DNA of 45,575 nucleotides, counting the filler, from Hausera hauseri (Eukaryota), in NCBI GenBank assembly GCA_046269625.1. It is 8 parts of 8 records of this genome, joined end to end, with 100 filler letters (N's around TTAATTAATTAA, not from the genome) between each part and the next. Parts side by side here need not be neighbours in the genome. Positions count along the whole stretch, not along the records: positions 26,676 to 30,674 come from JBJURY010829527.1; 7 more parts are not named here. One strand, given 5' to 3'. A program made the translations under genes and the position numbers. The notes under the pieces were generated by a model. That model had not been told where the DNA came from. It was given only the letters and a program-made list of their open reading frames with translations, and searched no databases. Every line of letters starts with the position of its first letter. The first letter of the stretch is position 1. This document shows positions 26,676-30,674 of the stretch, piece after piece.

Positions 26676-27056
26676 TGTTAGGAGGTGGCTGGTTTATTGA
26701 AGTTTGGATTGAGGAAAAATTGGTGTGAAATCAATCGAGCTGACCGATTGGGAGAAAAAGTCAGCTAGTAAATTGTCGACTCCGTTTAGGTGCTTAATTT
26801 CAAAATTAAATGTGGAAAAATACGATATTTGCCTCTCCTGACGTGGAGAAGACGATTTCATAGTGAGAATTTGAAGCAAGGGCTTGTGGTCCGTTTGTAT
26901 TGTAAAAGTTCGTGCAGTTAGTAGATGTTTAAAGTGTTTTACAGCAAGGACCAATGCAAGCAACTCTCAGTCAAAGGTGGCATATCTTTGCTCTTGTGCC
27001 GTGAATTTTCGTGAGAAGTCTGGCTCATGGGATCCATTTTTGACTTGATGGAGGAC
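26676..27056 (-). mobile_element. Gypsy RNase H fragment (copy 3)
   Basis: VLHQ...FSRKFTAQEQRYATFD*ELLA...KHFKHLL...TDHKPL...GVDNLLADFFS. Confidence 0.92.
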
Positions 27057-27453
27057 TGTCGTGCCCACATTCACCTAATCGATAATTTGGACAAAAAAAA
27101 AACATTTTCTTGTCTAAATTTATAAATCAAATTCTCTTGTTTTCAGCCAATTTCGAACGTTTAATATTTCAAGTCTATTTTTCTCTTTGTAACTCGACTG
27201 TGCCTAATTTTGACATGTAATTTTCTCATCATTATGAAATGGTTATCAATCTTGGGCAGCTTTGTTATTGTATGATACGGTTCAGAATTTGTTGATATTG
27301 TACAGACTAAATACAACACGCGAATTTCAACTTACTCTCTATTGATGTTGGATTTAATGTCGTAATCGTTTTATTTTCTGTAGAGTTTTGGCTATCCATG
27401 GATAACCGTACAATAAATGACCAAATTATAAACCAAAACCTCGGAAATCACAC

Positions 27454-27464
27454 TGGTGTCAGAA
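27454..27464 (+). promoter_or_regulatory. Primer-binding site complementary to tRNA-Leu 3' end
   Basis: TGGTGTCAGAA one base after ...TCACA; this is a common invertebrate gypsy PBS (TGGTGTCAGAAGTGGGAT). Confidence 0.6.
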
Positions 27465-27699
27465 CCCCACATCTGTACACAGTCGTTGTACAACGGGCAG
27501 AAGTCCAATATTTTCTAATGGTCATTGATCCAGTAGGATCAACCGTTTTCCATCAACCAGTTAACCCAGGAGAGACCAATTCTCTAATAATCGAAACACG
27601 TCAAATAGAATTTTACATCCCATATCTACATCTCGGCGAAATCCAGGAATTATTTTATTTCTCCATCAACAGCACAGTCGACACAACAGATACTGTCAG

Positions 27700-28677
27700 T
27701 GCTGCTCCCGTCCAGCCGAATAAAATGCTAAAAACCAACGATTGCTGACGCAATTCTCATCCCTCTCACTCACCAAAATATAATTGTCGGGATATTGAAG
27801 GATCCAATACAGACACTTCTGAAATCGCCATTTGATTTCCTTAAAGCACTTTGTAATCTCACCCAAGGCGGGATTGTCAAACATTTTACTGCCTATATCC
27901 AGAATTTATCAGATCGTCATTCACGAAATCCTCAAGTATATTGGAAGGAAAAGGACCGTGCACTGCTCTTCATTACTTCCATTGCATCACATGGCGGTAC
28001 CGAAAGATACAGCGTTACGAATGCGACCTTCGTTGACATTGCTGCACTCTATAAGAGTCACGTGTTGCCGGGATTATCTGATAAATTGGCGGTAATGCAG
28101 TCGTTAAAGCCAACTGTATCAAGTATCTTATGGCATTCTGTAATATCATTTCCCACGACGAACTGAAATCATTGATAAATTTGCTATCGCAATTTGCCTG
28201 TCATCAATTTCACATCGTCTACACGTATGCAGCTTCTGCCGTTAATAAATTATTGATGGTTCGTTATCCGTAGTCACCAAATGCCATCAGTACTGCGGCA
28301 TATGTTAACGAAACGATGCTGTTTCGGTTGTGCGATGCATTGCAGATCGAAGGATCAGAAGAAAATGACTGTACTATGCAGGTCATTATGCGAGGTTTGA
28401 GTATGTTGAAAACTAGTCAGCTGCTGTTGGATAAAATTCTGCCGTTCTCACTACGAAAATTGGATTTAGCCGTTAAAAATCCGAAGAAACCACGATTCAA
28501 TCATTTCGTAATGGAATCCATTGACTGTGCTTAAAAATCGTGTGCAATAACAATTCCAATTACGTCAGTGAACTTAAAACTGCACTGGCACCAATAGTCA
28601 AAACGGTCTTTCAGAAAGAAGTTGAACAATTCCGGCCGTACATATTTCAATTGCTGAGTCTCCTTCTAGGTCACAGT
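27700..28677 (+). pseudogene. CSE1L: Exportin-2 internal fragment, frameshifted
   Basis: RDIEGSNTDT, DFLKALC, NPQVYWKEKDRALLFITSIASHGGTE, HIVYTYAASAVNKLL, GSEENDCTMQVIMR, KNPKKPRFNHFVMESI, QFRPYIFQLLSLLL. Confidence 0.88.
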
Positions 28678-28861
28678 CCACCTACATGTTGGTCACTAGA
28701 AGACTCACGTTGGGTCCCGCCTGGCAAATCTGACTTTGCCACGGGGGTGTGGTGTGGTGCCCACATTCACCCAATGAGTGATTTGTTGATAAAAACTTTG
28801 TTTGTTTCAATATTCAAAATAATAAAAGTTTTTTTGAGTTTCCTTAAATCCTTTTTGCACA

Positions 28862-30029
28862 ATGAGTGACTGTCTTTATATTCCCTGCATGGACAAACAG
28901 GTTAGACTAACATGGGAAAACGTTAATGAAGGTATTGTGTTTAATGATGGTTTTACGTCGGATATTTCTTCTGCTTCTGGTTTGTTGACTGAAGTTAAAT
29001 GGCTTTGTTCAATGCAAGAGCCGATTTCCCAGTATTTAGCTATACAGTCATACCATATTTTTGAAAAGCTTCAAAGTTTAAAAGAATACGATTTGGAAAG
29101 CCTCTGCAAAAGTCAAGAATACATAGCTGTCCTTACAGAATGCAGATAGCAGATTGAAAATGAAATTAATTTTTTGGAACGAAATGGACAAGATAAGAAT
29201 AACGATAAATACGTGTACTTAACGTCTCAGTGTAACACAATTAGAGATCAGCAGTTGTTGTGGCATTTGTCTGAAATTCTGTTTATCAAGTCCAGTCTAG
29301 CGGGCTACCTGCTACAAGATTTAAAAGGTTGTCTGAATCTGCAGCAGCAACATGTCTTGTCAGCCTACGAATTATTGCTGGATTTATTCAATGACGGTGA
29401 TCGGGATATGATATTGGAAGACGACGATAGATTCTGGCCAACGGTTATTTCATTAGGACTTCACGGTCGAAATTTAGAGCTCGCCAACTTGTTGTCCTAT
29501 TATTCTCACAACAACCGTCAGATCTTTAGAACTATTCTCGACGTTTTAGATCTCATGCCGGTTTTTTGGTACGAAATTGAAAATCTCACAGAATTTGAAA
29601 TTGCTTGGCAAAAATGGCATCGATTGGTTCGAGAATCGCTGATCGACAGTTGCGTGCTGAATGTGTATCCACACTTATGTACCCTGGCGAGAGTTTTGGC
29701 CGGCGACGAACGCGTATTCATTGAAGATATCGTGATGTAGCTTTTCGACGGATATCGGTTTTTGGCGTTTATATCGTTTAATTTGCACTCATCACCGTTA
29801 GCAAGTATTAAGTATGTTAAACAGTGTTACAAGCGATTTAAACAGTCATTTTTGAATTCATTAGAATATCAGAAAGTTCCGAATATGGGGCAATTATCCG
29901 AAGAATTGTTGAAAGCCATCGATTCGATATTCAATTTGAATATCGGCAACTTAATTCTAACCATTTCTAAAAACAAAAACAATTGGTGGTTGCTAGCCCA
30001 TCTGATTGACATGATCGATAAACTTCACA
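28862..30029 (+). pseudogene. NUP85: Nucleoporin Nup85, N-terminal ~390 codons with two in-frame TAG
   Basis: One frame from ATG 28862 with TAG at 29147 and 29738. Motifs SQEYIAVLTEC, LLWHLSEILFI..S.AGYLLQDL, FWPTVISLGLHGR, F..AWQKWH, PHL..L.RVLAGDE, NWWLLAHLIDMID. Ends abruptly at the tRNA-complementary sequence. Confidence 0.82.
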
Positions 30030-30030
30030 C

Positions 30031-30069
30031 TGGTATAAGAAGTGGTATTCGAACCCACGCCCACGAAGT
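30031..30069 (-). other. Mature tRNA-Leu 3'-half copy including CCA (an extended PBS when read on +)
   Basis: + strand TGGTATAAGAAGTGGTATTCGAACCCACGCC vs tRNA-Leu complement TGGTGTCAGAAGTGGGATTCGAACCCACGCC (3 mismatches in 31). No 5' half of a tRNA is visible. Confidence 0.8.
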
Positions 30070-30189
30070 TTATTGCATCTTATGAATTTTGAAATTGAGA
30101 ATTCTTGTTGGCCATTTTTTTAGCGTCGCAGTTTTAATTTAATCTATCGCCGATCGGGTTTAATTTATTACAATCGTGAATTAGATTTT

Positions 30190-30674
30190 TTATTTATTGC
30201 CATATTGGAATATTCCTTTGGAATATTCTCTTTCTTGGATTTCATTTATCCTCTCGTCCGTGGAGACGTCTGCAAATTGCTCACTAACCTTTGCAATTTC
30301 ATTCCGTACAGCTTGCATTATTGGGTCTGGTATTTGCAGATTAGTGTTAAACTCGACTAATGCATTATGCATTCTTGCTAACAAGGTTTGCAGTAATGTT
30401 GCCAATGATACGTTATCTACATCAGATTCATCTTCTTTTGTTAACAATCTTCGGAAAACTTTATCATCTCTGGCCTTTCTGCCTTTTAGTTGATAAAGTT
30501 TTGTCGTTCCGTTCGGTCTTCCGCGTGTTCTTTTATCTGATTGTATTTGTTCAGATATAGGGATATTTATTTCGTTTCCCATCTGCTGTGCTTCTTGATG
30601 ATGCCCGGCTTCTTCCATTTCTTTTTATCCGACATCAGCTATAATCTCATCGATTGTCTCTTGTTCAGACTGTC
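30190..30674 (-). CDS. Unknown protein C-terminal fragment with RGRP (AT-hook-like) motif
   Basis: ORF 30190-30618 (KRTRGRPNGTTK); runs toward the contig edge. Confidence 0.3.

What the first reader, a model, noticed from the sequence alone, without database searches (positions are those of the whole stretch)
27057..30069. Candidate new system: LTR retroelement whose 'LTRs' are built from captured host gene 5' ends
Seen, in order on one contig: head TGTCGTGCCCACATTCACCTAAT (27057, cutting a gypsy RNase H frame), then 396 bp ending TCACA (27452), C, and a tRNA-Leu PBS (27454). An internal region carries a CSE1L fragment, then the conserved 3' module and GGGGG PPT (28678-28747). A second head TGTGGTGCCCACATTCACCCAAT (28753) is followed by NUP85 upstream sequence and ~390 codons ending TCACA (30029), C, and a tRNA-Leu complement (30031). 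Established: LTR elements have TG...CA LTRs, a PBS just after the 5' LTR and a PPT just before the 3' LTR, and the two LTRs are identical at insertion. Here every cis signal is correctly placed, but the two LTR-position segments share only ~33 nt and the last 5 nt. Inference: tRNA-primed minus-strand synthesis starts on host transcripts at CACA-like sites and is transferred onto the element's short U3 head. That would make variable, host-derived LTRs and chain-like cargo arrays mobilised in trans by the gypsy family in this window.
Basis: partly seen in the sequence, partly recalled or inferred. Interest (0 to 1): 0.85.

Follow-up and report, generated by a model that had tools for sequence, protein, structure and literature searches.

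The report
Host mRNA fused into retrotransposon LTR
A decayed retrotransposon copy, probably in a flatworm genome, has pieces of two host genes (CSE1L and NUP85) copied into it by reverse transcriptase; this is an unusually clear fossil of a known copying accident, not shown to be a new mobile system.

Summary
The two heads share about 41-44 nt, not 33. The right-hand tRNA complement is 38 nt long and includes the complement of the CCA end, so it was copied from a mature tRNA-Leu.

NUP85 homology runs in one frame from its start codon to about codon 388. It has no intron and only two in-frame TAG stops. The CSE1L piece is an internal, frameshifted fragment.

In the only public run that holds this DNA, the head, 3' module, PBS and leader are high-copy. 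The CSE1L piece is also repeated. The NUP85 piece is at roughly single-copy depth.

Best reading: an LTR-mediated chimeric retrocopy. Minus-strand synthesis began on a tRNA-Leu primer, switched after at most 6 nt into NUP85 mRNA, ran to near its 5' end, and switched back into U3. Plus-strand synthesis then read 38 nt into the primer, which is the mark of a dead-end product.

The 5' LTR shows no host-gene similarity, and there is no matching LTR pair and no target-site duplication.

A recurrent system of host-derived LTRs could not be tested, because no other copies of this genome were reachable. It is not excluded (about 10%).

The parts
26694..27056 (-). Decayed Ty3/gypsy-type RNase H fragment, cut off at the head of the LTR. 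It has one in-frame stop at 26967-26969.
   Evidence: Pfam RT_RNaseH E 2.5e-10, profile positions 54-105 of 105. Frame translation. Very high summed depth in run X1.
27057..27452 (+). 5' LTR of 396 bp, TGT...ACA. The first roughly 43 nt are the shared 'head'. The body shows no host-gene similarity. GC 31%.
   Evidence: X1 depth is about 280-410 for the body. Variants carry a 93-nt replacement and a head-2-like head.
27454..27464 (+). Primer binding site. 11 of 11 nt are complementary to the 3' end of tRNA-Leu(CAA), one base (C) after the LTR.
   Evidence: Published tRNA-Leu(CAA) probe and sequence. The same PBS is described for Steamer elements.
27465..27760 (+). Element leader. High-copy, with no recognisable protein domain.
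   Evidence: X1 depth 2.2-6.5k. Pfam, protein database and ESM Atlas searches all blank.
27785..28680 (+). Internal cargo: an intronless fragment of a CSE1L/CAS exportin mRNA lacking both mRNA ends. It is broken by two frameshifts and several stops.
   Evidence: Pfam Cse1 228-370 of 370 and CAS_CSE1 30-149 of 435, in colinear pieces in frames 1, 3, 3 and 2. The start before 27819 was read by eye only. Its 3' part is repeated in X1 at depth 1.3-4.6k.
28681..28752 (+). Conserved 3' module with a G5 run (28743-28747) in the polypurine-tract position, followed by TGTGG.
   Evidence: GC 57%. X1 depth is about 10.9k for the bin containing it and head 2.
28753..28795 (+). Head 2: the first roughly 23-43 nt of U3, ending in an A-run that is the likely switch point.
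   Evidence: 36 of 44 aligned columns match head 1. The exact 15-nt core occurs twice, against 0 expected.
28796..30024 (+). NUP85 retrocopy: about 66 nt of 5' UTR plus codons 1 to about 388. It is in one frame with no intron and has two in-frame TAG stops (29147, 29738).
   Evidence: Pfam Nucleopor_Nup85 E 8.5e-18. tblastn hits are colinear in one frame to NUP85 residues about 19-410 of flatworm and other proteins. X1 depth is only 35-80, and X1 reads GAG and CAG at the two stops.
30025..30030 (+). TCACAC: identical to the last 5 nt of the 5' LTR plus the spacer C. This is the second likely switch point.
   Evidence: Repeat D8, 27448-27464 against 30025-30041.
30031..30068 (+). 38-nt complement of the 3' part of a mature tRNA-Leu: CCA, acceptor strand, T arm and part of the variable arm. 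Read as a retained copy of the primer.
   Evidence: 28 of 31 nt match the mouse tRNA-Leu(CAA) probe, and 25 of 27 nt (positions 12-38) match the tRNA-Leu(AAG) probe. The T arm was recognised by Rfam's tRNA/tmRNA clan in truncated mode, weakly, at E 0.62. There is no complete tRNA.
30069..30250 (.). AT-rich flank that is low-copy where it could be checked (depth 20.6 at 30125-30127 and 46.6 at 30158). It is not a continuation of the gypsy gene cut at 27056.
   Evidence: Depths. GC 28%. No RT or RNase H domain to the right.

Best explanation
This is a decayed, non-autonomous, tRNA-Leu-primed LTR retrotransposon copy. It belongs to the abundant gypsy-associated family that owns the head, PBS, leader and 3' module. 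It records two reverse-transcriptase template-switch accidents of the known 'LTR-mediated retroposition' kind.

1. An older accident put an internal CSE1L mRNA fragment into the element body. That chimera then amplified as part of the family.

2. A younger accident made the NUP85 junctions.
- Minus-strand DNA synthesis started from a tRNA-Leu primer on an element PBS.
- It copied at most about 6 nt of U5 (TCACAC) and switched into a co-packaged NUP85 mRNA near codon 388.
- It ran to, or near, the mRNA's 5' end, then switched into U3 at an A-run about 43 nt from the U3 start.
- It continued through the polypurine tract and the element body.
- Plus-strand synthesis then copied head-NUP85-TCACAC and read 38 nt into the primer tRNA instead of stopping after about 18 nt.

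Such a product cannot complete plus-strand transfer or offer a proper right end to integrase. It was therefore probably fixed by a non-canonical route, hence no target-site duplication. It is a one-off, dead-end pseudogene and not a working LTR.

What is shown: the anatomy, the identities of the pieces, and their relative abundance in one run. What is inferred: the order of switches and the route of insertion.
For: - Motifs and boundaries are exact.
- NUP85 homology is colinear in one frame from the start codon to about codon 388, preceded by about 66 nt of AT-rich leader.
- CSE1L pieces are colinear, but frameshifted and truncated at both ends.
- The same TCACA-C-TGG boundary stands at 27448-27456 and at 30025-30033. 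This points to a genuine U5/PBS junction rather than a chance site in NUP85.
- The 38-nt tRNA-Leu complement includes TGG, the complement of the post-transcriptionally added CCA. It therefore came from a mature tRNA, not from a tRNA gene.
- Published work shows that plus-strand synthesis running past tRNA positions 58/54 yields cDNA that cannot be integrated (PMC8599865).
- Chimeric retrocopies flanked by discontinuous LTR elements are documented across animals. They have microsimilarity of a median 6 bp at the switch points, partial mRNAs, several genes per locus and secondary amplification (PMC5131818).
- Candidate microsimilarities here are the A-run (AAAAA, possibly plus C) and TCACAC.
- In run X1, depth is at least 10k for the head and 3' module, 4.6-6.5k for the PBS and leader, and 1.3-4.6k for the CSE1L 3' part. 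It is only 35-80 for NUP85 and 20-46 just right of the tRNA copy.
- X1 reads sense codons at both TAG stops. Of the 26 listed X1 differences inside the coding part, 9, 7 and 10 fall at codon positions 1, 2 and 3 (my count). That fits neutral decay of the window's copy.
Against: - One canonical replication cycle would give two identical LTRs. Here the 5' LTR is ordinary and only the 3' position is chimeric. An extra step is needed, such as a second R-mediated transfer, a read-through template, or later recombination.
- The parental NUP85 and CSE1L loci and the family's canonical LTR were not available, so microsimilarity and intron loss are not demonstrated.
- The head, PBS and leader are 10-30 times deeper in X1 than this LTR's body. 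Ordinary subfamily divergence explains that, but so would variable LTR bodies.
- X1 may be a different strain or species, so 'low copy' need not hold for the source genome.
- No read or contig spanning either NUP85 junction was listed.
Confidence: 0.55

Rival explanations
1. This is a family whose LTR bodies are routinely replaced by host mRNA 5' segments, because tRNA-Leu primes on host transcripts at CACA-like sites and the cDNA is handed to the short U3 head. The result is variable LTRs and cargo chains mobilised in trans by the gypsy family.
For: - NUP85 occupies the LTR position exactly, with all cis signals in place.
- The head, 3' module, PBS and leader are far more abundant in X1 than this LTR's body, as variable bodies would predict.
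- Two different host genes lie in one element.
Against: - The NUP85 module is near single-copy depth in X1.
- The 5' LTR shows no host-gene similarity.
- About 43 nt of U3 is unlikely to supply a promoter, and there is no R, so such an LTR could not sustain transcription or strand transfer.
- The 38-nt primer copy marks a non-productive product.
- There is no partner LTR and no target-site duplication.
- Depth in the bin 27346-27479 suggests, roughly, that the last tens of nt of the 5' LTR are shared with the abundant family, as in an ordinary LTR.
Confidence: 0.1
2. A DNA-level mosaic. An ordinary element (27057 to about 28795) was joined to a separate chimeric element or retrocopy. The join came from ectopic recombination or deletion in the shared head, or from nested insertions followed by deletions.
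For: - The two heads differ at 2 of 23 nt and carry indels.
- The flanks are not contiguous parts of one gypsy gene, and there is no target-site duplication.
- The region is a repeat-rich pile-up.
Against: - It still needs an RT-made head-NUP85-TCACAC-tRNA unit, so it moves the problem rather than removing it.
- No remainder of an ordinary 3' LTR lies in the 600 nt to the right.
Confidence: 0.17
3. An assembly artefact. Contigs were wrongly joined across the short high-copy head and the PBS/tRNA repeat.
For: - Both junctions lie in high-copy short repeats.
- No listed contig of X1 spans them.
- The assembly method is unknown.
Against: - For a false join, NUP85 sequence would still have to abut a head on one side and TCACAC-tRNA on the other. 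The local junctions would therefore be real.
- 43 nt is short for a long-read misjoin.
Confidence: 0.1
4. This is the true NUP85 gene (a long first exon) with a truncated LTR element upstream and unrelated tRNA-derived sequence in its first intron. TG|GTATAAG could be a splice donor.
For: - One open frame apart from two point stops.
- X1 has an open version that is 94-98% identical.
- A GT follows the breakpoint.
Against: - It requires two coincidences: a U3 head at the 5' UTR, and the exact U5-end/spacer/CCA-complement at the other end.
- There are two in-frame TAG stops.
- The listed differences from X1 show no third-position excess.
Confidence: 0.05

Closest known systems
LTR-mediated retroposition / chimeric retrocopies (Tan et al. 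2016, PMC5131818; yeast Ty1 retrosequences cited there)
   Same: - Intronless, partial host mRNA copies are embedded in discontinuous LTR-element sequence.
- There is no poly(A) tail and no L1-type hallmark.
- There are short candidate microsimilarities at the junctions.
- More than one host gene lies in one locus.
- The chimera amplified secondarily (the CSE1L piece).
   Different: - In the described Drosophila cases the retrocopy replaces internal ORF sequence, and both LTRs are expected to coexist in the product.
- Here NUP85 replaces almost all of U3-R-U5, with a switch within about 6 nt of the primer.
- A 38-nt copy of the primer tRNA is retained.
Gene-fragment capture by plant LTR retrotransposons (Bs1; 425 maize elements, PMC2774510)
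   Same: A host gene fragment is carried inside a non-autonomous LTR element and amplified with it, as the CSE1L fragment is here.
   Different: This is an animal host. That survey found no element carrying fragments of more than one nuclear gene, whereas this locus has two. The capture here is in the LTR position.
Ty3/gypsy-type elements primed by tRNA-Leu, e.g. Steamer of bivalves (PMC8905726)
   Same: The same PBS, TGGTGTCAGAA(G), lies next to a TG...CA LTR.
   Different: - Steamer's PBS follows the LTR directly, whereas here one C intervenes.
- No gag-pol is present in this copy.
- No sequence relationship was tested.
Plus-strand strong-stop read-through of the primer tRNA (HIV-1 with tRNA lacking m1A58/m5Um54, PMC8599865)
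   Same: The plus strand copies the primer beyond positions 58/54. The predicted outcome is a product that cannot complete transfer or integration.
   Different: That is an experimental retroviral system. Here it is a genomic fossil in an invertebrate retrotransposon, and the modification state of the tRNA is unknown.
Retroviral oncogene transduction
   Same: Host mRNA sequence is joined to retroelement sequence by non-homologous RT recombination.
   Different: Transduced genes sit inside the genome between intact LTRs and depend on a DNA-level fusion upstream. Here the host sequence replaces the LTR itself.

Membership tests
LTR retrotransposon (non-autonomous copy) | LTR bounded by TG...CA | tested here: met
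   27057 TGT ... ACA 27452.
LTR retrotransposon (non-autonomous copy) | PBS complementary to a tRNA 3' end just after the 5' LTR | tested here: met
   27454-27464 matches the published tRNA-Leu(CAA) 3' end at 11 of 11 nt.
LTR retrotransposon (non-autonomous copy) | Two near-identical LTRs | tested here: not met
   Only about 41-44 nt at the start and 5-6 nt at the end are shared. The rest is at shuffle level.
LTR retrotransposon (non-autonomous copy) | Polypurine tract just before the 3' LTR | tested here: inconclusive
   There is only a G5 run at 28743-28747, followed by TGTGG before the head.
LTR retrotransposon (non-autonomous copy) | 4-6-bp target-site duplication | tested here: not met
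   The left flank is GAGGAC. To the right, CTGGTA follows 30029, TTTATT follows 30068 and AATTTT follows 30083.
LTR retrotransposon (non-autonomous copy) | gag/pol coding capacity | tested here: not met
   No retroelement domain lies between 27454 and 28752. Only CSE1L pieces were found there.
LTR-mediated chimeric retrocopy | Intronless copy of a host mRNA segment | tested here: inconclusive
   Homology to NUP85 (about 388 codons) and to CSE1L (about 290 codons) is uninterrupted and colinear. The intron positions of the parental genes could not be obtained.
LTR-mediated chimeric retrocopy | Flanked on both sides by discontinuous LTR-element sequence | tested here: met
   CSE1L lies between the leader and the 3' module. 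NUP85 lies between the U3 head and the U5 end plus primer copy.
LTR-mediated chimeric retrocopy | Microsimilarity at switch points | not testable with these tools
   The candidates are the A-run at 28791-28795 and TCACAC at 30025-30030. Confirming them needs the parental mRNAs and the canonical element.
LTR-mediated chimeric retrocopy | Partial mRNA with no poly(A) tail | tested here: met
   NUP85 stops near codon 388 of about 650-790. CSE1L lacks both mRNA ends. There is no A-tail at either right junction.
   NUP85 does. The body of 27057-27452 has no Pfam, protein-database or Atlas similarity and behaves as a repeat family in X1.
   No access to the source genome.
   X1 depth is 35-80 over NUP85, against thousands for the element parts. 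X1 may not be the source strain.
Non-LTR (L1-type) processed pseudogene | Poly(A) tail, 5' truncation, long target-site duplication | tested here: not met
   The 5' end is complete, the 3' end is truncated, and there is no A-tail and no target-site duplication.

The most novel reading that the evidence does not exclude
The abundant head/PBS family regularly makes LTRs out of host mRNA 5' segments. A short U3 head and the last few U5 bases would then be all that integrase and RT need. Diverse host 5' exons would be spread through the genome as LTR-like modules, and the NUP85 unit would be one young example caught before decay.
Probability: 0.1. Interest if true: 0.8.

Novelty: new variant of a known kind. 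Interest (0 to 1): 0.4.

Why it matters
If the reading is right, this locus preserves three steps of an aberrant reverse transcription in one piece of DNA:
- a switch onto a host mRNA within a few bases of the primer;
- a forced jump from near the mRNA's 5' end back into U3;
- plus-strand read-through deep into the primer tRNA.

It extends LTR-mediated retroposition, described mainly for insects and vertebrates, to what is probably a flatworm, and to a case in which the LTR itself is replaced. It also shows a host exportin fragment (CSE1L) being amplified as retrotransposon cargo. That matters for gene annotation and for small-RNA cross-talk between transposons and genes.

It does not at present justify a new class of mobile element.

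Tried and rejected
Searches for other copies of the element:
1. Protein searches were blank for the ORF spanning the 3' module, head and NUP85 junction, for the LTR-tail/PBS/leader ORF and for the right-flank ORF.
2. The 23-nt head pattern gave no hit in JGI metagenome contigs. The 19-nt head core gave none in IMG/VR.
3. The head core gave 6 hits in bacterial MAGs and the PBS 17-mer gave 18 hits in IMG/VR. By my own rough estimate, that is about what chance would give. I did not open these hits.

Ideas tested and dropped:
5. A full or internally deleted tRNA at 30031-30115. ARAGORN found none, and Rfam found no tRNA in the piece or in a 96-nt window. The 53-nt 'mini-tRNA' (ATAAGATG read as the 5' acceptor strand) folds no better than shuffles, z 0.6.
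6. The 5' LTR as a host gene 5' end. No supporting hit was found, and the bacterial-type promoter scan is not informative.
7. Mapping the CSE1L pieces onto solved structures. There were no PDB sequence hits. Very short pieces gave no Pfam hit.
8. ESM Atlas searches for the two unexplained ORFs gave no usable hit.
9. A target-site duplication. None was found at any plausible right end.
Full report
**Scope**

Only places 26676-30674 are real sequence; the rest of the window is N. All work was done inside that range. The stretch is retroelement-derived DNA of an animal, so I only observed and compared. I built no consensus and repaired no frame.

**1.

The following were read directly:
- Head 1, TGTCGTGCCCACATTCACCTAAT, starts at 27057.
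- The segment ends with TCACA at 27452, followed by C and then TGGTGTCAGAA from 27454.
- A G5 run lies at 28743-28747.
- Head 2, TGTGGTGCCCACATTCACCCAAT, starts at 28753.
- TCACA ends at 30029, followed by C and then a tRNA complement from 30031.

The 15-nt head core occurs exactly twice, against none in 100 shuffles. The repeat finder independently pairs the two heads (D1) and the two TCACAC-TGGT junctions (D8).

A local alignment shows the heads share 36 of 44 columns. There are two small indels, and the similarity ends in an A-run. After that, the 5' LTR body and the sequence behind head 2 are no more alike than shuffles (score 22 against 21.3 +/- 2.3).

To the left, the minus strand encodes the C-terminal half of an RT-associated RNase H domain (Pfam RT_RNaseH, profile positions 54-105 of 105, E 2.5e-10). 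Its frame continues, through one stop, up to 27056.

**2. What the pieces are**

*PBS.* TGGTGTCAGAA is the exact complement of the last 11 nt of vertebrate tRNA-Leu(CAA), as printed in two papers. It is also the PBS reported for Steamer elements of bivalves.

- 30031-30068 matches the mouse tRNA-Leu(CAA) probe at 28 of 31 positions.
- Positions 12-38 match the tRNA-Leu(AAG) probe at 25 of 27 positions. This reaches through the T arm into the variable arm.
- It begins with TGG, the complement of the CCA end. Eukaryotic tRNA genes do not encode CCA (established knowledge), so the template was a mature tRNA.
- There is no complete tRNA. Rfam recognised only the T arm, in truncated mode and weakly.

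*NUP85.* tblastn with NUP85 proteins found by a full-library phmmer search gives one colinear hit in a single frame.
- The hit runs from the start codon at 28862 to about 30024 and covers residues about 19-410 of proteins of 640-790 aa.
- There are no frameshifts and no gap that could be an intron. There are two in-frame TAG codons, at 29147 and 29738.
- Upstream lie about 66 nt of very AT-rich sequence (GC 23%), plausibly the 5' UTR.
- The closest named NUP85 proteins are from flatworms: Paragonimus, Cichlidogyrus, Trichobilharzia and Macrostomum. Identity is only 28-36%. The host is therefore probably a poorly sampled platyhelminth. This is an inference.

*CSE1L.* Pfam finds four colinear pieces: Cse1 positions 228-317 and 333-370, and CAS_CSE1 positions 30-97 and 103-149.
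- They span 27819-28680 in frames 1, 3, 3 and 2, separated by stops.
- By eye, homology seems to begin near 27785.
- This is an internal mRNA fragment lacking both ends. It is more decayed than NUP85.

*Leader.* The leader (27465 to about 27760) and the ORF that spans it have no Pfam, protein-database or Atlas match.

**3. Abundance in the one public run**

Only one run (X1) holds the stretch. It is stored as short contigs and is probably genomic. Summed contig depth per bin was:

| Segment | Summed depth |
|---|---|
| Gypsy RNase H fragment | 10-26k |
| 5' LTR body | about 280-410 |
| PBS and leader | 4.6-6.5k |
| Middle of CSE1L | 220-350 |
| CSE1L 3' part | 1.3-4.6k |
| 3' module plus head 2 | about 10.9k |
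| NUP85 | 35-80 |
| Positions 30125-30158 | 20-46 |
| 30294-30561 | 17-19k |

Single NUP85 contigs have depths of 28-35, so that is roughly the single-copy level.

What this shows:
- The head, PBS, leader and 3' module belong to a family of hundreds of copies.
- The CSE1L piece travelled with that family. One abundant variant lacks 27797-28348, between two 8-nt GAAGGATC repeats.
- This particular LTR body is a minor family of roughly ten copies. Its variants include a 93-nt replacement and a copy with a head-2-like head.
- The NUP85 part is not amplified.
- X1 reads GAG and CAG at the two TAG stops.
- Of the 26 listed X1 differences within the coding part, 9, 7 and 10 fall at codon positions 1, 2 and 3 (my count). 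That is what neutral decay of the window's copy would give.
- X1 differs from the window nearly everywhere, so it is another strain or a close species. The copy numbers are therefore indicative only.

**4. Mechanism**

The two NUP85 junctions coincide with the two ends of an LTR. The right one reproduces the element's own U5-end/spacer/PBS boundary (TCACA-C-TGG). A chance site in NUP85 with that 6-mer at exactly the right place is unlikely.

Priming on a real element PBS followed by an early template switch explains it without extra assumptions. The steps below are inferred.
1. A tRNA-Leu primer anneals to an element PBS.
2. At most about 6 nt of U5 are copied.
3. Synthesis switches into a co-packaged NUP85 mRNA near codon 388.
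4. It runs to, or near, the mRNA's 5' end.
5. It jumps into U3 at the A-run. AAAAA, possibly plus C, is common to both partners.
6. It continues through the G-run, the 3' module, the CSE1L cargo, the leader and the PBS.
7. Plus-strand synthesis copies head-NUP85-TCACAC and then 38 nt of the primer.

Published work on HIV-1 states that when RT is not stopped at tRNA positions 58 or 54, the plus strand runs on. It then becomes non-complementary after transfer and cannot be integrated. That fits three features here: the missing target-site duplication, the low-copy flank right after the tRNA copy, and flanks that are not contiguous halves of one gypsy gene.

The general process is documented for flies, mosquito, fish, chicken and mammals as LTR-mediated retroposition. 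It involves microsimilarity-guided switches between element RNA and cellular mRNA. It yields partial, tail-less retrocopies flanked by discontinuous LTR-element sequence, sometimes from several genes, and sometimes re-amplified. The CSE1L cargo is a textbook case. Gene fragments inside plant LTR elements are likewise common.

**5. What does not fit, and the rivals**

A single canonical cycle would place the chimeric LTR at both ends, but the 5' LTR is ordinary. An extra step is needed. Three candidates are:
- a second, R-mediated transfer before plus-strand priming at the upstream polypurine tract;
- a read-through template;
- later recombination in the shared head.

I cannot choose among these.

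It is also what ordinary subfamily divergence of U3/R gives.

Arguments against a self-propagating system:
- About 43 nt of U3 can hardly carry a promoter, and there is no R.
- The module is single-copy in X1.
- The long primer copy marks a dead end.

A misassembly across the short repeats cannot be excluded, because no listed contig bridges either junction. Even so, NUP85 sequence would still have to touch a head on one side and a tRNA copy on the other.

Reading this as the true NUP85 gene requires two exact coincidences and ignores the two stop codons.

**6. Comparison and novelty**

The locus works like an LTR-mediated chimeric retrocopy, and I file it there. It differs from described cases in three ways:
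- the host mRNA replaces almost the whole U3-R-U5, not internal ORF sequence;
- one switch lies within about 6 nt of the primer;
- a 38-nt primer copy is preserved.

That makes it a new variant of a known kind. It is of moderate interest as a mechanistic fossil and as an example from a little-studied animal lineage. The stronger claim of a new system remains open at about 10%.

**7. Limits**

The following were not available:
- the source genome, the parental genes and the family's canonical LTR;
- long reads;

Searches of protein, metagenome, viral and prokaryote-genome collections gave nothing beyond roughly chance level.

Noticed in passing
window 27797-28348: In run X1 a more abundant variant of the element lacks these 552 nt of the CSE1L cargo. 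The deletion lies between two 8-nt GAAGGATC repeats (joint depth 611, against 220-350 for the long form). It could be an RT slip or a deletion derivative that amplified further.
   Followed up: partly
window 29147 and 29738: Both in-frame TAG stops of the NUP85 copy are read as sense codons (GAG, CAG) by all X1 contigs at those places. X1 also has a net +3-nt insertion near 29104-29108. X1 seems to hold at least two NUP85-like classes. One has depth about 29-35, is 94-98% alike and is open. The other has depth about 9-11, is about 90% alike and has 1-nt indels.
   Followed up: partly
window 30190-30618 (minus strand): A 142-aa ORF lies inside a very high-copy repeat (X1 depth 17-19k). It has no Pfam, protein-database or usable Atlas match. 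It is probably an unclassified transposable-element gene.
   Followed up: partly
window 30026-30124: The mean depth of this bin in X1 is about 3.1k, although positions 30125-30158 are at 20-46. Something within or next to the 38-nt tRNA-Leu complement is therefore highly repeated. Possible sources are many long tRNA-Leu-complementary sites or a tRNA-Leu-derived repeat. This is unexplained.
   Followed up: no
window 28748-28757: TGTGG occurs twice in tandem between the G5 run and the head (GGGGG TGTGG TGTGGTGCCC). Head 1 has a single TGTCG. It could be a 5-nt duplication at the polypurine-tract/U3 boundary.
   Followed up: no
window 26967-26969: The gypsy RNase H fragment carries an in-frame stop (…RYATFD*ELLAL…), so the element that was hit is itself decayed.
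   Followed up: no
window 27120-27126 and 27414-27419: A TATAAAT and an AATAAA lie in the 5' LTR at positions that would suit a promoter and a polyadenylation signal of an ordinary LTR. In 31% GC sequence this may be chance.
   Followed up: no
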